NCBI RefSeq assembly: GCF_964188315.1
Contig: NC_135670.1
Span: forward strand, 40,238,001-40,302,000
Direction: 5' to 3'
Length of the DNA stretch: 64,000 nt
Source of the DNA: Podarcis muralis
Lineage: Eukaryota
Shown: positions 2,073 to 31,950 of the stretch, piece after piece
Position numbering within the stretch: position 1 is the first letter of the stretch
How the letters are laid out: every line of letters begins with the position of its first letter
Program-made: the position numbers and the translations under genes
The notes under the pieces: model-generated
Databases searched by the model: none
Told to the model about the DNA's origin: nothing
What the model saw: only the letters and a program-made list of their open reading frames with translations

Positions 2073-5000
2073 CATAAAACATTAATAGTAAGAATCAGAT
2101 CCTATATAAAAAGTCACAAAAACTTTAAAGTAAACAACTTATATCAAATAAAGTAATATTCAATAATCCATTAGAATCCAGTATTACATCAGCAAACAGT
2201 AATTTAACAGTTTACACTTATCAATTACCATAAAGAATTACTAATCTATAATCAATAAAATAACATTGAATTACAATGCATAAAATTCCACAAAGGGTCA
2301 ACTTGAGAAACAAGGATACACAACTTAAAAGTTTATTTTTAAAAACTATCCCTGAAATCCTCTCTTCCCAGCTGTTTCTGCTGTTCTCAAAGTCAAGGTC
2401 TGGGAAAGGCTCCCGTCAGTCACTGGTGGACGAGGGGGGGTGCGCCCCGGGTGCCATGCCTGGGGGGGGTGGCGTGGCGGCACTCGCACCCCCGGTGGGC
2501 CAATCCTCTCAGGGGTGCCAGCTGGGGATGCGCCCCCCGGTGGGCGGCCCCCCAGAGGGTGATGCTCACATCCCTGGCAGCCAGCGCCACACGCTGGGTG
2601 TATTTGTGCGATCGGCGTGCGGCGCTGGCACCCCCAGGAGGATTGACGCCCCCCCCCAGGTGCACGTCATATTTGCCGCTCCAGCAGCTTCCTCCGCCAC
2701 TGGGGGCAGTACTGGGTTTTATGGATATATAGTTGGTGAACCGCTCTGTGAGGCATTGTTGCTTTGAATATGTGTGTCGGGACCACTTGCTATTGCTGAA
2801 CCACAACTCCCATCACCCCTGGACGTAGGCCATGCTTGCAGGGGCTGATGGGAGTTGTAGTCCAGCAACGTCAGGTGAGCCAGAGGTACCAACACTCTGG
2901 ATGGCCATTTTAAGCTGTGATTCCTGCTTTGCGGGGGGGGGGGGGGTGGACTAGAAGGCCCTCGGGTCCCTTCCAACTCTATGATTTTCAGGAGTTAAAT
3001 AATAATAATGCTAAAAATTATTATTATTTGACCATTAAAAAGGAAGGGAAAGAAGAAAAGGGGAGGTTNNNNNNNNNNNNNNNNNNNNNNNNNNNNNNNN
3101 NNNNNNNNNNNNNNNNNNNNNNNNNNNNNNNNNNNNNNNNNNNNNNNNNNNNNNNNNNNNNNNNNNNNNNNNNNNNNNNNNNNNNNNNNNNNNNNNNNNN
3201 NNNNNNNGAAGAAAGTATACAAGGGTAAGGATAGGAATTTAGACAAAGAAGTCAGGAAGACTATTTATAGTCAAGTGAAAAATGGAAGATGAGGTTAAAA
3301 ATTCAAAAAGAAAAAATGTTTTTTTCTTTTCTTTTTTAATAACAACATCAACAAGGTCTAAAACCAAAATGGGAATTTTGTGTGGAGTTAAAGGTTTTCC
3401 CTGGCTTGGACTTTAGATTTATTTTGCAACGCGACCAGCATGGCTTTCTCTTGTTTCCCCGGGGGGGGGGGGGTGTTCAGGCACTGGTAATGGTGGTGAC
3501 AGAGGAGGAGAAAGAAAAATTAATAATAATGGTAATAATAATAATGAAAAATAGAACCTGAAATAAAAGTAAAAATAAGGGGGGTACCCCAAGATGACCG
3601 TGAAAGGAGATCAGAAAGAAACAGGGGAGATAGTAAGAAGAAGAAGAAGAAGGGGTTTGGGCCCCCCCCCCCACCAAGGGGGAAAAACTGAACAAAGATA
3701 CAAGGGAAAACCCTTGTCGGTTCAGGGCTCTTCTGTGCCCCCCCCCCCCATTTTCATCCTTTTAACAATACTGTATGCAATCCGTAATTTTGAAATTACT
3801 TTTCCATAACTTTTCCCAATCCTCCATTTATATATTATGTCCTATTATATATTATGTCCCCATGTAATCATTACTGATTTAACCTCCTCATCTTTGGTCT
3901 CCCATTCTAACAATCAATTATACATTTTCTTTAATAATTTATTGTTCTCTTCTATTATTTCTCTTTGGAATCTAGATACAGTATAACTAAATCCTTTCTT
4001 ATTATCTTCTTTGAAGATCTAATTTAATTGTCGATGTTGCAGCCAATCATGGACTGAATCTTTTATCTCATCGTAATCTTTAAGTCTTATTTTCCCTTCT
4101 CTTTCTGTCAGTAAATCTCTATATGTCAGCCATTTTGCCTCCATATTTGTTCTTTTAATTTACATTGCCTCTGTTGGGGCCACCCACCAGGGTGTTTTTT
4201 GCTCTAACAAATCTTTGTTTTCCCCATACTTTTATTAATGCTTTCCTAATTATATGATTTAGAAATCCTTTGTGTATCTTCCCTTTATTATGCCTTAAAT
4301 ATGCATGCCAACCAAATCTATTATCATGTCCTTCCAGACCTAATAAATCGGTATTTTCTAATTTAATCCAATGCCAGATCCAAGTAATGCAGCTTGCCTC
4401 ATAATAAAGTTTTAAATTTGGAAGAGAGAAGCCTTCTCTATCCTTAATATTTAATATTTAATATTTTATTCTCGGCTTCTTCCCTTTCCAGATAAATTTA
4501 GATATATATTTTTGCCATTTCTTGACGGAATCTGCATCACTTATTGTCTGGAATAAAAACAACATTTTTGGCAATACATTCATCTTGATTGCTGCAATTC
4601 TTCCTATTAAGGAGAGATTCATTCTTCCCCATATTTCTAGATTCCTTTTTATTTCATTCCAGCATCTTTCATAGTTATCTTTATAGATATTGATATTTCT
4701 AGTTGTGAGGCAAATTCCTAAATACAGTATTAACTTTTTTATGGGTTCTATTTCTGTAATTTGGGATAATTCTTTTTTATCTGCTTCTCTTAGATTTTTA
4801 ACTAATAATTTGGTCTTGCTTTTATTTAATTTGAATCCTGCTACTTGTCCAAACTCCTGAATTTTTTCTGTTACTTTTGGGATAGAGTCTTTAGGGTCTT
4901 CTGCTGTGATTACCAGATCGTCTGCATAGGCTTTCAATTTATATGACTCTTCCCCTATCTTAATTCCTTCAGTATTTTCATCTGCCCTAATATTTCTCAC

Positions 5001-8000
5001 CAGGACTTCTAATACCAATATAAATAATAAAGGTGATAACGGACATCCTTGTCTTGTGCCTTTTTGTATTCTACATTCCTCTGTTACCACCTGATTGACA
5101 ATTAAGTTTGCTTTTTGGTCTGAATATATGGCTGGAATTCCTTTCCTAAATCTATTTCTGAAATTAATTTCTCCTACAATTTTTCCATAAATTCCTAAGA
5201 GACATTGTCAAAGGCTTTTTCAGCGTCTATAAACATCAATGCTACTTGTTTTTCATTTCTCACTTCCAGGTATTCTAGAATATCAGTGATATTTCATTTT
5301 TTCCCTTTTTTTGAATTTGCATTTTATTTATTTGTTAACATTCTTATATTACATCGATAAACATTGTCATATTACATTACAGGACTTACTATAATATAAT
5401 TTCCAACATGTATACAAAAATTATATACAAATTTTATATACCTAGAAAGAAAATGAAACAAAAAAAGAACAAAGAGAAAAAACAAAAACAAATCCCCCCC
5501 ATATCATATACATATACACTAGACTTCTTGTCTATCCCGTTGTATATTCCTTTTTTACAAATGAATGTACTCTTATTATTGTATATTTATTTATCTAATA
5601 CATTCCTATATCAATATGTGCTCTTAGTCTTATTTTTCAGCTCATTCTCACTCCAACGTCATTCAAATGCTAGCATAGATAGCGACCCTTTACTGTATTT
5701 TTGAACATATGTTTTATATCTATCCCCCTTTTCCATAAATTTTTGTTTTGAATTGCCTCTCAGGGTATTTGTTATCTGCGCCATTTCAGCAAATTCTTGT
5801 AGCTTGTCATTCCAGTCCCTTATTGTCGGGGCTTCTTGTTCCTTCCCCCCCTTGGCCACCAAAGTCCGAGCTGCGGCCGTTGCACATAAGAACACCTCCC
5901 TAAAGGCCTGTCTTCTATTAGCCTTCGTCTGTATGCCTGGAAGGAATCCTGCCTGATCATGATGTATATAATCTTTCAATACTGATTTCATTCTGTTGGC
6001 CATTATGTTAGCAAATAATTTATAATCATTATTTAATAATGAAATTGGTCTGTAATTATTAACTGCTAACACATCAGCCTCTTGTTTTAGTATTAAAGTT
6101 ATATATGCCTTTTTCTATGTCTCTGGGACTTTCCCTGAGATTAAAATTTCATTTATTATATCCTGTAATGGTATCACCAATTGATTATTTAATTTCTTAT
6201 AATATTTTGCTGATAATCCATCTGTTCCTGGCGATTTCCCTGTTTTTTCCAGCTTGATTGCATCTAATATTTCCTGGCCATTTAAAATTGCTCATTTTTC
6301 TTCTGTTATCCTTGGCAGATTACTAGCCTTCAAATATTGGTCTATCGCCTCCTTTCCTATATAATTCTGTAGAATATTTGGAGCTGGTGACTTTGGACCC
6401 AGGATCCCTTCCTTGGTGGGGGGGGGGGTCTGGGATCGGAGTGGGATATGGGAGGTGGGGGCCCCACTGCCCCTTCTTGGCTCCCACCCTACTTTCCCTA
6501 GGCCCCACTTGGAAGCTGGCATGTAGCGCTCTCCCCTGGGCTCAGCGGTTCTCCTACCCCTTTGTCTATCCCCTTGTTTGTTTCAAGAGTTGGGGTGGAC
6601 TTTCTAGCCCTTCAGCCGTTCAGTTTGGGGGCTCCTGGTGCGATACCATGTCCCTGGGTCCTGTTCATCGGTGGGTGGCCTGGAAGAGCACTTGAGATTG
6701 CTCCCCCAAGTCTGCCATCTTCCCCAACTCTGATTTCATGATCATATGGAGGGCCAACGGTTCCTGACCACTGGCCTGAAAGGTTATTCCAATGGTTCTC
6801 AAAGGGTGTGGCAGGAACTCTGACAGATGCAAAAGATCAGAAAAGACAAAAGCTTATTTGTGTTGATGAGGAGATAAGAGTTTGTCTGTCTTAAATTAGA
6901 CCCAAAATTAAGGAGGCGAGCTAGTGGGGGAAGGGAGAAAGGAGGGACCGCCTCAGCCCGCCCAAGCCAAAATCCTGGACATATGCTTAAATATTTTAAA
7001 AATTCCCCCAGGTGCACATGTTTCGTGTACAAGATGACCCCCAATTTCTTACTAATTTTTTAAGCAAAAAACCTCATCTTATACCTGGAAAAATACGGTA
7101 TATTTTGGGAATGACTTGTGTTCTTATGCAGTTGCATTGCTTTTTACTTTCTGGATGTCTCATGATCATATTATAAAGTAGTTGTGTTCTGTGTTATAAA
7201 TCAAGCACTACTAGGATTTCTTATCAATAAAAAATTCAGTGTGGCACAAGCAAATATTTATTCTGAAAGTGTGGTCCAGAGGAAAAGGTTTGAGAACCAC
7301 TGGGTTATTCAGTAAACAAAATAAGTTAAAAGGAGGGTCACTTGAATCCCCCTACAACCCTTCTAGTTTTCTGTGTTCTTGTAAATATATTTTTTAATTG
7401 AATTTATACACCGCCCTATACCCAAAACATTGTATTGTTTAGTTTTTTAATCTGTTCCATCAATTTCCACTGTTCTTGTGAATGTGAAAACAGATTTGAG
7501 TGCCATCCAGGCCTGGATTGTTGATAATTGACCTGGTTGCCCTCCATGTGGGTTTTTCTGGACAGGTGTCTGGGCTCACGGCGACTATTGCAAGATCAAC
7601 CCCAAGACAGGAGGCATCGTCATGCTTGGCCGCAGGTAGGCCCATCACTTTGGCGTGACCATATGCGAGGGATGCTTCATGGCAGTTAGCAGAGGGGCTG
7701 CTGCGCACTTGTTGGCTGGGAATATAGGGACACATTGTCAGTCTGGCTCTGCTGACTGGCTGGCATTTCAGAGACTCCCTCCACTCTTTCTTCCCCCTCT
7801 CCTCTGTTTCAGCATCCTGTGGTCTTTGTCAGGTGGCACAACCTTTCCTTTGATGCAGGGCTGGCCCATGGCATACTGCTGCCCGAGGCAAAACAGCAAA
7901 TGCCTCCTTCTCCCCCACGTCAAGTTGCATGATACCCAATCCAATGCCAAGCAAGTTGCTTTGGCATCTAAGGCAGGCTCCCAAGTCTCATCAGCCCCAG

Positions 8001-19943: not shown

Positions 19944-21991
19944 GTAACACTGATTTATCATTTTATTTATTTCTTATAAAAATACATCATGAAAAATTTA
20001 AAACAAGTTAAAAACAAAAGGAAATTAAAAACAGACACCAGTAGCCCATGCTTGGAGTCATCTGTATAGGCCTGGCAGAAAAGTTTTCAGCAGGTGTTTA
20101 AAAGTTGGCACAGGAGGTGCCTGCTGACTCTCCAGTGACAGAGAGTTCCACAGGACTGGGCCAATGACACTTCCATATGGATTGCTGTACTGGGCAGTCT
20201 AAAAGAGACAAGGCTTCATGACAGCAGGGCATGTAGTACAGCACAGTCTCCAGGGAAGGAGCGCCAGACCTTTATTTAGAAGTATGTGAGCCAGGATTGG
20301 CGATGAGGCATCACACTTTGTAGTTACTTGCACAAAAATGAACTTTTGGGTGGAGGTGATGGTGGGGCATCTCATGGGGCAGAAGTGTGCACACTTCTGT
20401 ATTAAAGCTTAATAAGCAACTAGGAACCACATTCAGCCACAGGGTTTTGAAGTCAGGCTTGCCTCTTTTTTAACCAGAGTAGGCCACCACACAAGAACCC
20501 TGGTTTCCTGCCCAGGTGCTAGATCAGCCGGCCAATGCCCCTTTAGGTGGCACTCAGGCAATCCCTGCTCTTTGTTGCTAATAGTCAACTGCTTGTAAAC
20601 GATGCTAATTGAGACTTCCTTTGGCTGTTGGGAGCAGCTCCATGGACCACCTGGTTTCACAATGAGACTCTTGTGTGGTCCACAGCAGCTGGTCTGTGTG
20701 GTTGAACTTGCACCATGACAGCTGGGGGAAGGAGCTCTTCTGCTCTGCACCCAGAAAACTCAAAACCTGAAGATCTGTAACTGCCTCTTGCTTATTTTCA
20801 TCATTTTTCTTTTCCATCAGTTTCTTCGACCAACTGGCAACTTGGAGGCATCTGTGTCAGTTTGCATCAGCAAGTGTTTAGGTAGCTGGGCAGCCACTTG
20901 CCTTTATTCTGATGCTCTTGGGGCAGAAATAGTTAGAGAAATGTTAGCTAAGGAGAAAAGAACATAGTTGTGTGGTGACTGAGGGAGGGGGTAAGTGAGT
21001 GCAGATTATAGGAGCAGAACTAGGAGCTTGCGTGTGCCTGAGAGAGGGATTCTGATCCAGAGCTTCATGTCTTTTGCAGTACACAGATGGAGCTCTTGTG
21101 CAAGTAAGCTTTGCCACTGATTTTACTTGCAAGGCACAGCTCCATGTGGGCCATGGAAGGTGTGTATTACACTAGGTATTACACTATGGTGAAATCATAG
21201 GTATAACCTCACTTGCACGTAACACCGTTTGTGAATTGGATTCCGCTCCATCCCACTAAGAGTCCTAGTTTTGAGCCAAATGCCTCTATGTCTTCAGTTG
21301 TGTCTTTTTACAGTCATGAGAACTACTCATTTGCTTTTTGTGTGTCTGGTGGGTTGCAATGAAAGTGGCAGTTCTTGGAATCTGATGCCTGCGTGGAGCT
21401 AGTCATGTTGGCTCACCCAAAATGAATGCCCCGCTTAGGGTAGAAACACTGAGAAATTATGTCCTGGTAAAAACAATAGCAAGGGCCTCAGGAAGACAAT
21501 TTACAAGGATGCTGAGGTAATAAGCAGGTCTGCAGTATTTAATTGATTAATCTAACCAATTAAAAAAACCCTTTGATTACATAGTGCTCTTTGATTAATC
21601 TGTAGCAGATTTGACATACGCATAATCTTAACAATATGAAGTACTCATAAAACTGAATTTGGCAACTACTGTTTCCCTCTCTTCAGCAAGGAACTGTGTT
21701 GTTGCTTCAGCATTATTTTTGCTCAGATTCAGATTTGTTCAATTAATTTGCTGAAACTCATACTATTTATTTGCTAAGATTTCTTTAATTGGGTTGACAG
21801 CCCAAGTAATCGGGTGTGGGGTTGTGTGATTTTATCAAGGTAGTAGGAATCCCACCTGTGCTCATAGTATTTCAAACAGAACAGATTTTGTGCTCACTTG
21901 CTTAACTTAATACAGAGCACATGGAAAAGTAACCTCACAGTTGTCCTCCACCTTTGTCATGTAGGGGTTCAGTTCTCCGACATTGGTTGAG

Positions 21992-23074
21992 ATGCAGACC
22001 AGGATGAGAAGATTCTCGGTGTACATCTTACCAGCTCTATTACTTGCATGCTTGGTCTACTTAAGGAGAGATGCCAAGCTGGTGGCGTCTTTGGCAAACA
22101 GAGAACTGCGCAGGCCAAACGTAAGCGTTCCCAAGCTGGTGAAATCAAGCAAATGCTTGCCAGACATGATGGTCGCGAATTCCTTTCCCTCCCTCCCTGA
22201 GGTTCACCGTGTTTTCTTAACCTATAAACACTGCCGGAATTTCTCGACATTGCTGAAGCCCTCCAGATGTGCTGCAGAGACCTTCCTCCTGCTAGCAATC
22301 AAGTCCACCCCTGTGAACATAGACCGCCGCGCAGCCATCAGGAGCACCTGGGGGAAGGAGGCCATTATTGGTGGGAAATTGGTGAGGCTCCTGTTCTTGC
22401 TGGGCCGCTCAGAGATCAAAGTTCAGGCTCACTCCCTCCACCAGCTTTTGGCCTATGAAAACCTGGAGTTTGACGATATCCTCCAGTGGGATTTTGTTGA
22501 TAACTTCTTCAACCTGACACTAAAGGAGCTGCATTTCCTTCGGTGGGTGGCAGAGGACTGCCCCCATGCCTGCTTTGTGTTGAAGGGCGATGATGATGTC
22601 TTTGTGAACACCTACAACATTGTAGAGTTCCTTGAGCATCTGGACCCTGACAAATACCTTTTTGCTGGGGATGTCATCAGCAAAGCCCGGCCAATCAGGA
22701 ACACCAACACCAAGTATTTCATCCCAGAGTCAATGTATCCGGCATCCTTCTATCCACACTATGCTGGTGGCGGCGGCTATGTCATGTCACGGCTGATGGT
22801 GCAGCAGCTGCAGGTGGCGGTTGAGGACACTGAGTTGTTCCCAATAGACGATGTCTTTGTTGGGATGTGCTTGGCCAAAATGGGGATCATCCCAATGCAC
22901 CATCCTGGCTTTAAGACCTTTGGAATCCAGAGGCCCTTTAATCCCTTTGATCCCTGCCTGTACAAAGAACTGATGATTATACACAAACTGAACCCAACGG
23001 AGCTGTGGGTCATGTGGACGTTGCTGAAAGACGACAACCTCCGATGTGCCACGTCAGTAACTCAGAAACTATAG
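21992..23074 (+). CDS. B3GNT4: Beta-1,3-N-acetylglucosaminyltransferase 4 (GT31 family), single coding exon, 360 aa
   Basis: Intact ORF with an N-terminal signal anchor and the motifs [40 protein letters not shown] and [10 protein letters not shown]. Adjacent to DIABLO and VPS33A, as in human. Confidence 0.93.
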
Positions 23075-24354: not shown

Positions 24355-27010
24355 CTACACAGGTTTAGATCAGTTTAAAACATGTTTAATAATTTTCATG
24401 GCTTCCAGACGAGGGATGAGCTTGTAAAAGTACAAATCCCATAATTCTCAGGGAGAGAGGACCCACAACAGCTAAACTTGTTAAAATGTGTAGTGTTGCT
24501 AGACCATTGGAGTCTCCTACAGTAGCAAGCCACCTTGGCCTTGGCATAAAGTCCAGGGGTATTTTGAGCTGTTCTTCAAACTCAGGTGCTTCTCTTCCCA
24601 ATTTGAGGGCCCTCCAGATGTTTGCACTTCATTAGCAGTAGACAGGGGTCAAGGAAGATGGGGTTGTACTTAAGCATCTGGAGGAAGGAAGGTGCAGAGT
24701 GCTTCACTAGGCCTGGGTCACTGGACTCTGAAGATAGAAACCCCGAATTGTCTTTTACGGTAACCTCTGTATTAACCTAAGGGGTAAGTCACTGTGCTGT
24801 AACAAAATACATGTTGCACAATATATTCATGCCTAACCAAGAGCCATAATATGTCTTCATGGTTTTCATGTTTCAGTAGTCATTTTTCTCACTGGAATTT
24901 GGGCAGGAAAAGTACTGTGTGTTGGGGATGGAACTGCAAATAACCCTGGCTTGCTTCGTTTCCTTCCCTTTCACACCAATGCTGAATTATTTGGAAGAAT
25001 AGGGGTTGAACTCCCATGTGACAACAGAGAATAATGGATAGAAGAAATGTCTATGCAGCATTTAAAATTAAAGATTGCAGGGAGACGGGGAATAGAAAGT
25101 GGGCAATGCAGCTGATCACCTGCATGTGTGAAGTGTCTCCAGGTGACCAGCTGGTGGGGGGGGGGGGGGAGATGTTAATAAATAGGAAAACCGTTTTTTC
25201 TTCTTCTCCCCTTCACCCATTTTTTAGTCTTGTCAGCTCCATAAATTTACATAAATAGGGTAAGTGAACAGGCTAGTAAAGATGTTAATGGGCAGGTAAC
25301 TTTCCTGGGCTTAGTTGTAAGGGTGATGTGCATTACAAGCACACATAGACACATCTTTTCATATTATTGTTGTTGAAATTAAAATCCTAGTTCAAATTTC
25401 TGTATTGATTTTTAAAAATTATTATTATGCAATGTCATCAGCAAGGTTGGATTCTCCCCTCCTTACATTTTCTCAAGCTGCATCTTTTGCATTCCCCTCT
25501 CCTGAAAATCTCTGGGCCTTCCATGCTGCAGTTTTTGTTTTGATGGACTGCCTTGTCGTCTCCCAAAAAGCATCATGCATTGTCAAACAGCAGAAATCCA
25601 AATCATTGCAGACAAGGCCCACAAGTCCCGGCTGTTCCTTTTAGCATACCTTTCCTGTATTTTAAAAAAAGAACTGTGACTACTTTCTTTTCTGATGCAA
25701 TCTGATTTATGCTTCCCTAAAGTTGGGAGCTGGTGGCTGGAGAATAGAACATTAAATTTCGTTTGCAATCTATGAGAACGGTGTCTTTCTTGGGGAGGCA
25801 TAGATGTGTTATTATTTTTGCAATTAGTGTGTTCATGCAGGGCTGTAATTGATAGCAAGGGGCATTCAATTATGGTGGTATGAAGAGGAGATGAAAGGAC
25901 ACTTGTGGTGTGTCTCTTGAGCCATGATGCGTGCAGCAGTGAGAAGTGAATGTTTGTGTGCAACAGTTCCATCTGACCACAGGAAGTGATTTGCCTTTAC
26001 AAAAAGCCTAGCCCACCTTTCTTTCGCATTACCTGGCTCACATAGCATTCCAAAGGGTTCTCTTCACTTTGTGTTTGAGCAAGATAAAACCCACCTCTAT
26101 ATGTCATAAGCTCCAAGCTATATAGAGGTATATTTGGTTTGAAACACAGTTTTTGTTGGAGTTAGATTAAATGCACTTATGAGTAAGTCATATTGAATGT
26201 GCAAGATTGCACTGAAAATTTGAATGACTTGTCTCGAAAGGTGCCTTTTAGTAGTGTGACAGATGCTGCACAACCTATTCTCCCGATCCCCTTTTGAATT
26301 TTTTTACTCCATAATGTTAGGACAAGAGATTATTCCCATTGCTGGGTGCAGCTATCTGAACTGAATGATTAAATTACTGTTGGTGGTGGTGGTTGTGTAA
26401 TAGTGGTGGTGGTAATGAGACACCCTTGTGTGACTTCAGCTACTGTGTGCTACCTGTGCCATATTGGGACTATTGTCTGCATAGTCCACTTTTGAGAATC
26501 TGCCTTTAGCTACAGTTAAAAGAAGTCCCACTAACTTTTATTTTTAAAAAGAGGTTGCTAAAGTTCACATAATTAGGGGGGAGCATATACACACACAAGT
26601 GACATTTATCTTTTAAACTGACTTTCTGGCAACTTACTTGTGAAATTTCAGGTGCAATAATAGTTGGCATGACTTCATTTCCTTTACAACCCAAGTAAAT
26701 ATTTTCAAAGAAAAAACCCAACCCTTTTGAAATTGAAGGTACAATTAGCTCCAGGCTTTTGAGAGTTTGAGGACCTGTTACTGAATCATCTTCATTAGCC
26801 ATTCTAACAATAGATCCCCACAGCCAAGAAAGGACCCCTCAGCTGGCTACTTTCACATTTGCATAGTTGATTTAAATAGAAACACTTTCCCACAAATCAG
26901 AAATACAACTTCCAATGTCCAAGACCTGCAGCTAACAAGGTTGGTATTTAAACTTAGTGCCTCCTTCCCCCATCAAAGTTGGGGGCAAAATCCTCAAGGC
27001 TAGCAACACT

Positions 27011-30000
27011 TCAGTCTTCACGCAGGTAGGCTTCTTCATCGGTTTCCTCCACGCTGGCTTGTCGACCGGCTGGCAGCAACGGTGGCTCTTCTGTCAGCTT
27101 CATGAGCTCCTCAGTTTGAACTTCCGCCAGCTTAGTCTCTGCTTTCTGCGACAGCTGCCGCACCTCTTGCACTTGGGTTTTCACCAGCTGAATGTGGTTA
27201 TGTGTTGAAACGGATGCTTGATCAGCTCCTGAAAAAGTAAGGTTAAAATCAGCAGTTTTACACCACAACACTGATTGGACTTGGGTCCAGGCACAGATCC
27301 AAGGGTGTTCATGGATGGGCACATGTCATTCACATTAAGACATGGCTGTCATATGACAGCAACGTGCAGACATACATGGTTGCAGATGCAGACTTCCCTT
27401 GCACCCGTATTGCAGAATTCCTTCCATTATTTTCTTTCACCACATCACAGGACAACAAATCCTGAGGCTGGTTTAAAAAGATCTCTCCAAACATGGTCTG
27501 CATTTGATGAAACACATATATGCATGTTGTGCTATTTTCTTTTAACATCTCCAATATGCTTTTGGAGGGGGGGGGGGGCTTCTATGGTACAACCCAAACT
27601 CCAAAATCAGGTGTGAGAACACCCCTACACGTACACTCTTCTGGACCAAAGTGTTTGAGAGACAATTCAACTGAATACAACTTGTCCTAAGATGCAAATG
27701 CCTTGGAAAGGACAACAGTAGGGAGCTATTCAGTGATGGGGATATGCTTCAGTGAATAATACCAGACTGATACGCTGCTTCTGCTGCCATCTCTGAAAGG
27801 CGCAATGCAGTCATCCACCTGGATTCTAACTTGAGGTACTCCTGTTGCTTCGCAGTCATCTAAAGACAAAAGCTACAATGAGAAACAGCGTCTGAACTTG
27901 CTTATTCCACCAAAAATAAACATTTTATAAGCAGGTTAGGTTAAATAAAAGCAAACTTCTGATTTGGCACAATTCGTTTACAACCACTCTCATTTGAACT
28001 TACAGCTGTATATATTAACGCATATGTTGTTTGAGAGAGAAGGGTACCAGTGCTATCGGTTACTAAAGACACAGCTCTTCGGATTAACGCTTCATTGCTA
28101 AGTGAGCTTGGATCATGTTTCTGAAAGACAAATATTATGCGTGGGATCACTGTTAAGCCTGCTTTTTTTTTTTTTGCTTTTTTTAAATAATAATAAAAAA
28201 AGCTGTGTTTCAAGTGAGAATGGAGTAAGGAATTTGAAATCAGGCCTTTGGGGTCCATATCCAGAATATCAATGCTGGAATACTGGTTCCTGAAAAAGAT
28301 GCATTGAGTCCAGGTTTCTTGCTGGTTCCTTACCTCTACTCGAGCACCAATGATCACCTGCCAAACTGCATCCTCCTCATTGGAATTCATTTTCCCAAGG
28401 AGGTGTGTGTATTTCTGGTACAGTGACACCAAGGTGTAAACTGCCTGCAACAGGAAACAACCCATACTCAGTAGCACCCAGTTAACTAAAAGTTCGTGTT
28501 ATGCTACAGAATTCAGAAGTTCAGAGACAGAGCATCTTACCGTTGTATACTCTGTTAGAGCTTCAATTAACGCATATGTTGTTTGAGAGAGAAGGGTACC
28601 AGTGCTATCGGTTACTAAAGACACAGCTCTTCGGATTAACGCTTCATTGCTAAGTGAGCTTGGATCATGTTTCTGAAAGACAAATATTATGCGTTTGCCA
28701 GCTTGCTTTTCAAAATAATAGCTCTTCAAGATCTGGAAACCTGACATGGCTGCTGGCAAAAAAGAAAAAAGCCAGAAGTCATTAACTTTAAAAAATATTG
28801 TATTAGCGTAACAGTGAGTACACCAATCAAAAGTATAAATATATATACGAATGTGTAAAATATATAAAATGATACCAAAATGATAATACTATCTGTTACT
28901 TATAAGAAAAAAATGACCTAAAACAACTGGAATGGTAAAACCAGTGTTTGCTCAGATAAAACCCATTTAAATTAATGGACCTAAGTTAGACATGTCCATT
29001 AATTTCAGTAGGTCTGCTGTGAGTAAAACCTGTTAACTAATTATTGAAACCTAGTACAATGTTTACTTATCCCCAGGCAATTCCTAATAAAGTATGTGGC
29101 TCGACATTATCCCATATTTACATAATTAAAAAGTCTCTACTTTTCACTGAACAGATTGCCAGGGCTTTTCTTCTTTTGTTCTGAGTTTGTCAGTTTTCTC
29201 ACACCTTAGCTCTCCACTCATCTGAAGTCAGAGCATTGGGTTTCCCCCAGTTATAACTAATGGCGATCTGTGCAGCTGTCAATAGATGAACTGTTAGTTC
29301 TTTACCTTCTGGTAAAACTAAAACCTTTCCATAACCAAATAAAATAACTAGAAAATGCATTGGGGAAAGCCAAATGTTGTGATTTCTCCGTTAATTATAT
29401 GAGAAAAAAATAAAGCAGTAATGATACCTTAGCAGCTAGGTGCTCTATGCTTATAATAAGAACCTAAGAAAAGCCTGCTGGTTCAGGCCAATGGGCCATC
29501 TTGTTCTCACAGTGGCTCACAAGATGCAGGTGGGAAACCAACAAACAGGATTCAAGCACAAGAGCACTCCCCTTTCGTAGTTTCCAGCAACTGGTATTCA
29601 GAAGCATTTATGCCTCCAACTGTGGAGGCAGAGCACAGTGTTGAACCAGACCAACAAGGATGAGCAACTGAATTTTTAGTTCTTTATTAGCAAAGCACTT
29701 GGTTACATCACAAGAATACTCATGCTGACTCATGTCTAGGCACCTACGACTAGCAGACCCGTGCTCTGTCTTGGACAGTTGGAGCTACAGTGTGGCCCCA
29801 TCCCCTCCTGTCTTAAACTTGGAAGTGCATGGATCCTCCTCAACAGCAGCTCTACCTGTTCCAGGCACTACACGCCTCTCCTTGAGCGTGGAGACAACAA
29901 AGTGGGGTTTCCAAAACCATGACTGTCTCTAGAAGCACCCCGGTCTCTCCAATATCCGAGGCCTCCTGCAGCTCTTCTGTCTCTCATTGCCCTGTCTCCT

Positions 30001-31257
30001 CTTCCTGACTTACCTCTTGCACCACCAGTCTCTGCCTCCCTTGGCTCACACAGCACCCACCTCCCATTCCTCTGGCTCCTGCCCATCCCTGACAAATAGC
30101 CACATTTTCACATACTGTTTAAACAGCTGCAAACAAGTAGAGACACAGATGTCAGGAGGCAGCAAGTTCCAAATAAAAGAGTAACAAGGACAGAAAGGCT
30201 GGAGGTGTAAATAGAAGAAAAATTCAACCCCAAATGGAAGGGAAATGATTTGTTTTTAAAAAGAGAGACTACCAAAGAATTTAAAAATTAAGTTGAACCT
30301 TCGGTCCTGCCATTGTAACCGATAAATATTTCCCAGAGGGTTACCTGTGTAATAGGAATTGCAGACAAGGTTACTCCAAACCCCAGTGCTACCACTTTGC
30401 TCCATGGTCCCCTCAATCCTGACATGCAACGAGCTTTACCATTTGCCAAGATGGGAAAACTGTGCCTAGGGGGAAAAACATATCCATCTTAGGTACAAGT
30501 GCTATAAGCAATATGAATTCTGGAGGACAAATGAGCAAAGATCCACCATATTTGGAGTCCACTGCCAGCCAAGTCCTGCTTACAGTCCTCTCATTTCAAG
30601 AGTCAGGCTGTTAGGAAACTGAGCAGAAACTCCTTAACTGTACACATCAATGTATTCCTGTTGTGTTTTATGATTTTCCTGATATTGTAAGTGAGCTGGA
30701 ACTGGTCTGTGACCATAATAATAAAATTCAACTGTACATCTGTCACTGCAAAACAGTCTACCTCCTCCAGGATTTAGACTATAAAACATTTTCAAAGATA
30801 CCTTGTACCTTTGAAGATGCAGATATTGATTTCTTTATTTGCTCACGGTGCAATACAAGCAAAATAATCCAAATAAAACAATACAGGCAAACTACGTCCA
30901 GAACGAGCAGTTAAAAATCACAATAGCAACAGTTAGAAGAGAGATTTGTACAGTGAATACAAACTGGGTTCTGTTGTACTTAGTTGGGTGTCCAGATCAA
31001 ATTTCGCTTCAATTATCTCCCGAGGATTTACTAATTCACTGCAGGGGCCGCTCCTATAGGAGGCGGCAGCACCTCCGGGAGCGAATTCATCCCAGGCGGA
31101 CGTCGCTATGGAAGTGAACTGAAGCCAAAGGCGCGGCTGGGGGGAGACAAAGCTGCGGGGGCAGCAGAGCGAAGTGGAGGGAGCTGGTTCCTATCCACAG
31201 ATACCTGAAGAAAGCGTAGCAGCTCCGCAGCCACCGGCTACTCCAGGCCGTCGCCAT
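27011..31257 (-). CDS. DIABLO: Diablo/Smac IAP-binding mitochondrial protein, 243 aa
   Basis: Exons 31257-31205, 30465-30345, 28672-28541, 28444-28334, 27859-27763, 27228-27011 (732 nt, canonical splice sites). Translation has a mitochondrial presequence, [33 protein letters not shown] and a C-terminal EAYLRED*. Confidence 0.96.
28004..28120 (-). other. Duplicated, in-frame copy of most of DIABLO exon 3 in intron 4 (candidate cassette exon)
   Basis: 28014-28142 is identical over 129 bp to 28566-28694, including the acceptor. A GTAAGT donor follows at 28003-27998, giving 117 nt, phase 0/0, no stop. Confidence 0.6.
29455..29640 (-). mobile_element. Old CR1 3' end fragment
   Basis: Similar to 32545-32700; reverse complement of a squamate CR1 3' UTR (aagaacctaagaaaagcctgctgg...). 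Confidence 0.5.
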
Positions 31258-31950
31258 CTTGGTTCAGTCAAGGCGCAGCGGAAACACGTCATCACCAGCG
31301 CCACGGCTAATGCCATAGAGCTATTTCGTAAGGAGGGACGTAGCCCTCCGCGCCCCTTTTCTTCTGCGAGAGTCGTTTCGCGCCGTTGCCTTCCTCGGAG
31401 GCTGATCCCGGCTGGGTCTACGAGGGATTTATACAGCTAGAAGGACGACAAAAATCCTCATTATTAGGAAGCCGCCGCCTTCTATCGTCACTTCCGCTCT
31501 GGAACGGCTCTGCTTCTGTTTATGTCTTCGCAGAGCAGGAAGGAGAACGTGCGCGCTGCAGAGATGCGAAAGTGTAGAGTGGCGCTCCTCTATGGACACG
31601 GCAAGCCGGGCGGCGACGCGCCTTGCTGGAAATCCTGAGCGAGATGGAATTGGCGTCGACGGCTATGGGGACGGAGCGTCCTTTCGTCTGGTCCTGCAGA
31701 GTCCATCTGTTTAAATGACCCAGCGGCTGTTTCTTTACCGGAAGTTGAGCCCTTGTGGCTCTGCTATTTTTCTGGCTCTAGGAGGTTTCAAGCTTTTGCG
31801 CATGCGTCGGGGTCAGAGCGGGGGGGGGGCGAGAGGGCCTCTTGCGTGTTAGCACGTGATCCTTTGGCGGGAGAGACCCCCTGGCGCGTGCGCGTGGCGA
31901 GCCGCCCCCCCCGCCCCGCCCTCGCTGCGCCCTGAGGGGAAAAGCGCGCC
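31050..31950 (-). promoter_or_regulatory. DIABLO CpG island and promoter
   Basis: CpG-rich. Contains an ETS-type CCGGAAGT near 31738-31745, an NRF1-type TGCGCATGCG at 31797-31806 and the E-box CACGTG at 31853-31858. Confidence 0.7.

What the first reader, a model, noticed from the sequence alone, without database searches (positions are those of the whole stretch)
28004..28142. DIABLO intron 4 holds a second, in-frame, splice-competent copy of exon 3
28014-28142 equals 28566-28694 exactly (129 bp: 22 nt of intron with the acceptor plus 107 nt of exon 3), but sits downstream of exon 4, and the flanks are not duplicated. The copy then reads ATA TAT ACA GCT|GTAAGT against the native ATT GAA GCT CTA ACA GAG TAT ACA ACG|GTAAGA, so it looks like the whole exon minus 15 nt with a consensus donor. 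The 117-nt phase 0/0 exon would add [39 protein letters not shown] between exons 4 and 5. This segment is the start of Smac helix 1 and covers the positions of human mature V26 and F33, known dimer-interface residues, so inclusion could change dimerisation or XIAP binding. Perfect identity with a diverged end suggests recent duplication or gene conversion.
Basis: partly seen in the sequence, partly recalled or inferred. Interest (0 to 1): 0.72.

Follow-up and report, generated by a model that had tools for sequence, protein, structure and literature searches.

The report
Young exon-3 copy inside DIABLO intron
The common wall lizard carries a recent 131-base insertion in an intron of the cell-death gene DIABLO that copies the start of exon 3 and by accident looks like a usable extra exon, but nothing shows that it is ever spliced into the message.

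Summary
Positions 28014-28142 equal 28566-28694 exactly (129 nt: 22 nt of intron 2 plus 107 nt of DIABLO exon 3, minus strand). It is by far the longest complex exact repeat in the window.

The window is Podarcis muralis. The copy is real DNA: short-read contigs of another run reach 30 nt into it from the unique flank, and the 129-nt unit has double depth there.

P. raffonei, P. lilfordi, Lacerta agilis and Zootoca vivipara have the unit once and an uninterrupted empty site in intron 4. The copy is therefore a young, lineage-specific insertion of 129 templated nt plus 2 untemplated nt, with 2 nt lost and no target-site duplication. That is the signature of a break-repair patch.

ATATACAGCT|GTAAGT is ancestral intron sequence. 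The in-frame 117-nt pseudo-exon is an accident.

No inclusion junction appeared in two RNA-seq runs or one transcriptome, and no 282-aa isoform is on record. However, the RNA animals carry a divergent haplotype and may lack the insertion, so use in carriers is untested.

If included, the exon would split helix 2 of the three-helix bundle. The verdict is an ordinary, probably neutral structural variant and a tidy example of how a candidate exon can arise.

The parts
28014..28142 (-). Inserted copy, 129 nt: the last 22 nt of intron 2 with the AG acceptor, plus the first 107 nt of exon 3
   Evidence: Exact repeat. Absent at the orthologous site of four other lacertids. A contig of run X2 enters it from the unique flank, and the unit has depth 18.9 against 8-11 in the flanks.
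28143..28144 (-). Two untemplated bases (CC on the gene strand) at the upstream junction. They stand where the other species have AG or GG.
   Evidence: Alignment A2 of the filled and empty sites; coordinates checked.
28566..28694 (-). Template of the copy: the native intron 2 / exon 3 boundary
   Evidence: It is the only copy of this unit in P. raffonei, P. lilfordi, L. agilis and Z. vivipara.
28004..28120 (-). Potential 117-nt, phase 0/0 pseudo-exon (39 codons, no stop)
   Evidence: No splice junction to it was seen in RNA.
28004..28013 (-). Ancestral intron bases ATATACAGCT that would form the 3' end of the pseudo-exon
   Evidence: Present at the empty site in P. raffonei, P. lilfordi and L. 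agilis.
27998..28003 (-). Pre-existing cryptic donor GTAAGT
   Evidence: Invariant in all five lacertids. It matches 6 of 9 U1 positions, the same count as the native exon 3 donor.
28152..28156 (-). TTAAC, a candidate branch point 33 nt upstream of the copied acceptor, in ancestral intron
   Evidence: Motif scan; conserved in four of the five lacertids, with L. agilis reading TTAGC. Function is inferred, not shown.
28541..28672 (-). DIABLO exon 3 (residues 59-102)
   Evidence: RNA joints 28672/30345 and 28443/28540.
28334..28444 (-). DIABLO exon 4 (residues 103-139)
   Evidence: RNA joints.
27763..27859 (-). DIABLO exon 5 (residues 140-172)
   Evidence: The canonical joint 27859/28334 has 6 + 6 reads and a contig of depth 160.
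30345..30465 (-). DIABLO exon 2, ending in the IAP-binding motif AIPI followed by TQ
   Evidence: RNA joints.
31205..31257 (-). DIABLO exon 1 coding part
   Evidence: RNA joint 30464/31204.
27011..27228 (-). DIABLO exon 6 coding part with stop
   Evidence: RNA joint 27227/27762.

Best explanation
This is a young insertion, specific to the Podarcis muralis lineage, in intron 4 of DIABLO. A 129-nt stretch was copied in the same orientation from 552 nt upstream in the same gene: the last 22 nt of intron 2 plus the first 107 nt of exon 3. It was patched into a broken site of the intron with 2 untemplated bases added and 2 bases lost. There is no target-site duplication and no poly(A) tail of its own. 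That is the signature of end-joining repair of a double-strand break with a templated patch; the mechanism itself is inferred. Whether the template was DNA or unspliced pre-mRNA cannot be told. By accident the patch landed 10 nt upstream of an ancestral GTAAGT and 33 nt downstream of an ancestral TTAAC. A constitutive acceptor, 107 nt of exon and a good donor therefore now frame a stop-free 117-nt unit in phase. It is most likely a neutral intronic variant, a silent or at most weakly used pseudo-exon, and not a functional Smac isoform.
For: The repeat is exact and unique in the window. The window is identical to P. muralis GCA_964188315.1. In short-read contigs of run X2, a 3.7-kb contig ends at 28043, exactly k-1 = 30 nt inside the copy. 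The 129-nt unit has depth 18.9 against 7.8-11.1 in the flanks, so both copies exist in raw reads. P. raffonei, P. lilfordi, L. agilis and Z. vivipara have the unit once, and the two flanks of the copy abut in their intron 4 (GTGATC-AG-ATATACAGCTGTAAGT in P. raffonei and L. agilis, GG for AG in P. lilfordi; Z. vivipara has a small deletion there). The copy shows 0 differences from its source, whereas the orthologous units of the congeners differ by 2-3 nt. These junction features match class 2 templated sequence insertions (PMC5110952). RNA shows only canonical joints, with E4-E5 at 6 + 6 reads and a contig of depth 160, and no joint 27859/28004 or 28120/28334. Lacertid DIABLO proteins on record are 243 aa, plus a 212-aa form with a later start and a 344-aa Zootoca model with an N-terminal extension. 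No 282-aa form appeared among 283 hits. The E4|E5 junction (residues 139|140) lies inside predicted helix 2 (123-170, pLDDT above 90), so inclusion would interrupt the three-helix bundle.
Against: By simple measures the pseudo-exon looks as splice-competent as native exon 3. It has the same 22-nt acceptor region, six of six intronic donor positions at consensus, a branch-point candidate and the exon's own internal sequence. The RNA test is weak. Only about 12 canonical E4-E5 junction reads were seen, and a joint needed 3 reads to be listed. The RNA animals (X16, X23, X24) share a haplotype about 2.4% different from the window in intron 5. The X16 depth in bin 28008-28151 fits a flank contig that stops at about 28014 rather than 28043, and one joint row near the masked tract 28159-28202 was dropped. 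These animals may therefore lack the insertion. The upstream junction 28142|28143 was not seen in a listed X2 contig, because the tool masks the adjacent A/T tract.
Confidence: 0.72

Rival explanations
1. The pseudo-exon is really spliced in by animals that carry the insertion. That would give an in-frame 282-aa Smac with a partial second helix-1 segment inserted into helix 2. Such a protein could be a new isoform or, more likely, a hypomorphic or unstable product.
For: The copy has the acceptor and internal sequence of a constitutive exon, a GTAAGT donor, a TTAAC at -33, and workable flanking introns of 213 and 144 nt. It is in frame and stop-free. The RNA runs laid may come from non-carriers, so no carrier has been tested.
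Against: No inclusion joint was listed in two raw RNA runs or in transcriptome contigs. No such isoform is on record for any lacertid. The insertion point lies mid-helix 2.
Confidence: 0.2
2. The DNA outcome is the same but the mutational route differs. Either replication template switching (FoSTeS/MMBIR type) occurred, or a 552-nt tandem duplication was followed by loss of 423 nt of the second unit.
For: The template is only 552 nt away, on the same strand and in the same orientation. An 11-of-18 similarity (AAAAGCAnGCT) lies just upstream of both the source and the target.
Against: Neither junction shows microhomology of 2 nt or more, and there are 2 untemplated bases. The two-step route needs the deletion ends to coincide with the duplication ends.
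Confidence: 0.15
3. The copy is an assembly artefact of the reference genome.
For: Short exact local duplications can arise from consensus or polishing errors. The upstream junction was not shown in a listed contig.
Against: Junction 28013|28014 is present in k-mer contigs of run X2 at the same depth as the flank. The repeat unit has twice the flank depth. X2 differs from the window at more than 10 positions across 4.3 kb.
Confidence: 0.02
4. This is an old exon duplication whose core was recently homogenised by gene conversion, as the reader suggested as one alternative.
For: Perfect identity of the core with unrelated flanks. The A-rich stretches upstream of both copies look vaguely alike.
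Against: Four other lacertids, including two congeners, have an uninterrupted empty site. The flanks of the copy are orthologous to plain intron 4, including the A/T tract and the supposed 'diverged end'.
Confidence: 0.02

Closest known systems
Class 2 templated sequence insertions (break-repair patches; Onozawa and Aplan, PMC5110952)
   Same: The insert has an identifiable genomic template. There is no target-site duplication and no poly(A) tail. The junctions show a microdeletion and non-templated bases. The insert is lineage-specific and possibly polymorphic.
   Different: The template is not distant: it lies 552 nt upstream in the same gene and in the same orientation. It spans an intron-exon boundary, so an RNA template would have to be unspliced pre-mRNA. 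An RNA origin was not tested.
Tandem exon duplication giving alternative or mutually exclusive exons (PMC9013439, PMC9741552)
   Same: A second copy of exon sequence with its own acceptor sits in the same gene, in frame and of similar length.
   Different: Only 107 of 132 nt were copied, and the donor is borrowed from the intron. The copy is not adjacent to its parent, because exon 4 lies between them. Used together with the parent it would add sequence rather than substitute for it. There is no evidence of use. Known events are mostly ancient, whereas this one is very young.
Intronic pseudo-exons / cryptic exons
   Same: Intronic sequence bounded by good AG and GT signals that does not appear in the mature mRNA sampled.
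   Different: It was created in one step by importing a proven acceptor and exon body, not by point mutation or a transposable element.
Known Smac/DIABLO splice variants such as Smac3, which skips exon 4 (Fu et al. 2003, cited in PMC2077895)
   Same: It would be an in-frame change in the helical body that leaves the N-terminal IAP-binding motif intact.
   Different: Those variants skip or replace existing exons and are documented in mRNA. This one would add a duplicated segment and is undocumented.

Membership tests
Templated sequence insertion, class 2 (double-strand-break patch) | The inserted sequence has an identifiable template elsewhere in the genome | tested here: met
   129/129 identity to 28566-28694.
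Templated sequence insertion, class 2 (double-strand-break patch) | No target-site duplication, no poly(A) tail on the insert | tested here: met
   Filled versus empty site alignment. The A-rich tract upstream of the insert is already present in species without the insert.
Templated sequence insertion, class 2 (double-strand-break patch) | End-joining marks at the junctions (microdeletion, untemplated bases, little or no microhomology) | tested here: met
   AG/GG lost, CC added, and no microhomology of 2 nt or more.
Templated sequence insertion, class 2 (double-strand-break patch) | Template lies in a distant genomic region | tested here: not met
   The template is 552 nt upstream in the same gene.
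Templated sequence insertion, class 2 (double-strand-break patch) | Presence/absence polymorphism within the species | tested here: inconclusive
   Present in the reference and in run X2. The depth arithmetic for X16 hints at an empty allele, but the deciding joint row was dropped.
LINE-mediated (class 1) insertion / retrocopy | Target-site duplication of 5 nt or more, a poly(A) tail at the 3' end, and a TTTT/A target | tested here: not met
   None of these features is present at the junctions.
Tandem exon duplication with alternative use | Whole exon with both of its splice sites duplicated next to the parent exon | tested here: not met
   The copy ends after 107 of 132 nt, the donor is ancestral intron, and exon 4 lies between the parent and the copy.
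Tandem exon duplication with alternative use | The duplicated exon appears in mature mRNA | tested here: inconclusive
   No joints in X23, X24 or X16 and no isoform on record, but the carrier status of the RNA animals is unknown.
Pseudo-exon | Intronic, bounded by AG and GT signals of normal quality, and absent from the mRNA sampled | tested here: met
   with the depth and carrier-status limits stated above.
Smac_DIABLO (PF09057), coding content of the copy | Significant match to the family profile | tested here: met
   E 1.2e-16 over profile positions 51-86.

The most novel reading that the evidence does not exclude
The insertion is a segregating, single-event-born cassette exon that carriers really splice in. 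That would produce a 282-aa Smac whose helix 2 is interrupted by a second copy of the start of helix 1. It would be a natural example of exon birth caught at the polymorphic stage, or a natural DIABLO hypomorph, in a wild lizard.
Probability: 0.2. Interest if true: 0.55.

Novelty: new member of a known kind. Interest (0 to 1): 0.33.

Why it matters
It matters mainly as a clean, datable example. A single repair event imported a proven acceptor and exon body into an intron, next to a pre-existing cryptic donor. That made a complete in-frame candidate exon in one step, and empty sites in four relatives fix the before-state. If carriers turn out to include it, this would be a rare view of exon duplication at its very start, and a test of how far splice signals alone decide inclusion. 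Otherwise it is an ordinary neutral indel. For annotation, it warns that DIABLO exon 2-exon 3 junction reads map equally well to 28120. That produces a false exon 2-to-28120 junction.

Tried and rejected
1. Older duplication with diverged flanks and a converted core. I first saw a likeness between the A-rich stretches upstream of the two copies. The empty-site alignment shows these flanks are plain ancestral intron, so I rejected it.

2. The RNA joints 28120/30345 (4 + 4 reads and one contig) looked like exon 2 spliced to the copy. They are exon 2-exon 3 junction reads with 107 nt or fewer in exon 3, which fit both places. They mirror 28672/30345 (4 + 3 reads), they account for the depth in the copy's bin, and no matching joint 28004/27859 exists.

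3. Reaching the older P. muralis assembly through proteins P0122 and P0127 failed: no record.

4. A motif search for AVPI found nothing because the lizard motif is AIPI.

5. A word look-up in the scan's notes for similar exon copies gave nothing.

6. I did not use the large representative protein search. The word search settled the family and the absence of a longer isoform.

7. The joined 282-aa model was not built, searched or folded. Exons were handled one by one by reference. The only fold made is of the annotated 243-aa protein.

Full report
**Observation.** The gene lies on the minus strand. Positions 28014-28142 equal 28566-28694 over 129 nt, 552 nt apart, and the sequence on either side is unrelated. 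Apart from microsatellites, the next longest exact repeat in the 64-kb window is 52 nt and belongs to an interspersed repeat. Chance is therefore excluded.

The unit holds the last 22 nt of intron 2, including the acceptor, and the first 107 nt of exon 3. After the copy come ATATACAGCT and then GTAAGT. It matches Pfam Smac_DIABLO (E 1.2e-16).

**Gene and species.** I queried with a natural 178-aa open frame of the window (27941-28477, minus strand), which runs from exon 4 through the intron and the copy. The word search returned DIABLO proteins of many vertebrates. The lacertid cluster holds these members:
- 243-aa proteins of P. muralis, P. raffonei, P. lilfordi and Lacerta agilis;
- 212-aa forms with a later start;
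- a 344-aa Zootoca model with an N-terminal extension.

The locus of P. muralis XP_028565988.2 (GCA_964188315.1) is identical to the window. Each of the six exons, taken one by one, translates to a stretch of that protein, and the lengths sum to 244 codons:

| Exon | Window coordinates |
|---|---|
| E1 | 31205-31257 |
| E2 | 30345-30465 |
| E3 | 28541-28672 |
| E4 | 28334-28444 |
| E5 | 27763-27859 |
| E6 | 27011-27228 |

**Is the copy real DNA?** I laid four runs on 27000-31300.
- Run X2 consists of short-read contigs. It differs from the window at more than ten positions.
- A 3.7-kb X2 contig runs from 27000 to 28043. That is through the unique flank and exactly 30 nt (k-1) into the copy.
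- The 129-nt unit is a separate contig of depth 18.9, against 7.8-11.1 for its neighbours. Another contig enters the native unit from 28565.
- This is what a k = 31 graph gives when the unit is present twice. The low-side junction of the copy therefore exists in raw reads at normal depth.
- The high-side junction was not among the listed pieces. It abuts an A/T tract (28159-28202) that the tool masks, so this gap shows nothing.
- A misassembly is very unlikely.

**Origin.** I fetched the orthologous loci of P. raffonei, P. lilfordi, L. agilis and Z. vivipara through their proteins.
- Each locus holds the 129-nt unit once, at exon 3. The two flanks of the P. muralis copy lie next to each other in their intron 4.
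- The other species read ...AACAGTGATC-AG-ATATACAGCTGTAAGTTC... (GG in P. lilfordi; a small deletion in Zootoca). P. muralis reads GATC-CC-[129 nt]-ATATACAGCTGTAAGT.
- The event is thus a net insertion of 131 nt: 129 templated and 2 untemplated added, and 2 lost. There is no target-site duplication, no poly(A) tail on the insert, and no microhomology of 2 nt or more.
- The A-rich tract just upstream is already present in species without the insert.
- These are the marks described for class 2 templated sequence insertions, read as patches used in end-joining repair of a double-strand break (PMC5110952).
- This case differs in that the template lies only 552 nt away, in the same gene and orientation. 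Whether DNA or unspliced pre-mRNA served as template cannot be told.
- Replication template switching, or a tandem duplication followed by a deletion, are less economical routes to the same product.

**Age.** The copy has no difference from its source, while the orthologous units of the two congeners differ from it by 2-3 nt. Together with the empty sites, this places the event after the split of P. muralis from those species.

The "diverged end" is not a decayed exon 3 tail.
- The 10 nt ATATACAGCT and the GTAAGT donor are ancestral intron. The GTAAGT is invariant in all five lacertids.
- A TTAAC 33 nt upstream of the imported acceptor is also ancestral, although L. agilis reads TTAGC there.
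- The pseudo-exon is therefore a chimaera of an imported acceptor plus exon body and a borrowed donor. Its reading frame is a one-in-three accident.
- By simple counts it looks as good as native exon 3. The 22-nt acceptor region is identical, the number of U1 matches is the same (6 of 9), and the would-be introns are 213 and 144 nt.

**Is it used?** The stranded raw RNA runs X23 and X24 were read at about 1.9 billion letters each. They gave only canonical joints:

| Joint | X23 reads | X24 reads |
|---|---|---|
| E6-E5 | 13 | 4 |
| E5-E4 | 6 | 6 |
| E4-E3 | 6 | 2 |
| E2-E1 | 5 | 8 |
| E3-E2 placed at 28672 | 4 | 3 |
| E3-E2 placed at 28120 | 4 | 4 |

- The reads placed at 28120 are junction reads with 107 nt or fewer in exon 3, so they fit both copies. 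They account for the small depth in the copy's bin.
- No joint 27859/28004 or 28120/28334 was listed. The listing threshold was 3 reads.
- The transcriptome contigs of X16 carry the canonical E5-E4 joint at depth 160.
- No lacertid protein on record has the extra 39 residues.

**Limits of the RNA test.**
- The junction counts are low, so inclusion below roughly 20% per run would escape.
- X16, X23 and X24 share a haplotype about 2.4% different from the window in intron 5. X16 shows 10 differences and 2 gaps in 415 nt, and the synonymous change 27833 G>C appears in 17 of 18 X23 reads and 11 of 11 X24 reads.
- The X16 depth of 8.78 in bin 28008-28151 is almost exactly the misplaced 27-nt piece at depth 45.6 plus about 7 nt at 4.93. 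Its flank contig therefore seems to stop at about 28014, not 28043.
- One X16 joint row beside the masked tract was dropped. These animals may carry the empty allele.
- If they do, the insertion is polymorphic and inclusion in carriers has not been tested.

**Consequence if included.** A fold of the annotated 243-aa protein, using an alignment of 31 orthologues, gives helices at 67-115, 123-170 and 174-217, with pLDDT above 90 in the core. The protein matches solved Smac chains from residue 53 on. The exon 4/5 boundary is at residues 139|140, in the middle of helix 2. The extra exon would place residues 59-94 there, which are the linker and the first 28 residues of helix 1, followed by YTA. 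That is more likely to break the three-helix bundle than to adjust the dimer interface. The copied part does cover the positions of human V26 and F33, and the lizard has Leu at the latter. I did not build, search or fold the joined 282-aa model.

**Comparison and verdict.** The nearest known kinds are templated break-repair insertions, for origin, and intronic pseudo-exons, for present state.
- It resembles a tandem exon duplication (PMC9013439, PMC9741552) but fails that definition. The exon is partial, the copy is not adjacent to its parent, and the donor is not copied.
- Known Smac variants such as Smac3 skip existing exons (PMC2077895).
- The finding is real and neatly resolved, but it is an ordinary kind of mutation with no shown function.
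- Its value is as a dated, single-step example of how a complete candidate exon can arise, and as a mapping trap for exon 2-exon 3 reads.

Noticed in passing
window 21983-23074 (+): An intronless 363-aa open frame with a Galactosyl_T domain (PF01762, E 2.1e-44). It is probably the beta-1,3-glycosyltransferase gene that neighbours DIABLO in other vertebrates; that neighbour relation is from memory and was not tested.
   Followed up: partly
window 29448-29735 and 30600-30743: DNA contig depth of X2 reaches 4,500-7,800 here, against about 10 elsewhere, with some antisense RNA reads. These are high-copy interspersed repeats in DIABLO introns 2 and 1.
   Followed up: no
window 28159-28202: The A/T-rich tract just upstream of the insertion is longer and more complex in P. 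muralis than in P. raffonei, L. agilis or Zootoca. The reads tool masks it, which hides the upstream junction of the copy.
   Followed up: partly
window 27941-28477 (-): The frame of exon 4 stays open through retained intron 4 and the copy for 178 codons. Intron-retaining transcripts of the filled allele would therefore not meet a stop until 27941.
   Followed up: no
window 27375-27833: RNA runs X16, X23 and X24 share about 10 differences and a 2-nt deletion against the reference in intron 5, plus the synonymous change 27833 G>C in exon 5. DNA run X2 lacks most of them. The RNA seems to come from a divergent P. muralis lineage.
   Followed up: partly
window 29196 and 29291-29331: X16 contigs carry a 16-nt insertion behind 29196 and replace 39 nt at 29292-29330 by CA. 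These are further small indel differences in intron 2.
   Followed up: no
window 28993-29023: In three RNA runs, reads cover only these 30 nt and continue on both sides into the same unrelated sequences, on the opposite strand. This is a short piece shared with another transcript or repeat. It lies beside the 39-nt imperfect inverted repeat at 28942-29032.
   Followed up: no
window 31590-31706 (-) and protein P0126: The 344-aa Zootoca DIABLO model starts with about 100 extra residues. Its first 28 residues resemble a 38-aa open frame upstream of exon 1 in this window. This is probably an over-extended gene model rather than a real N-terminal extension.
   Followed up: no
window 3069-3207: A run of N, either an assembly gap or masked.
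   Followed up: no
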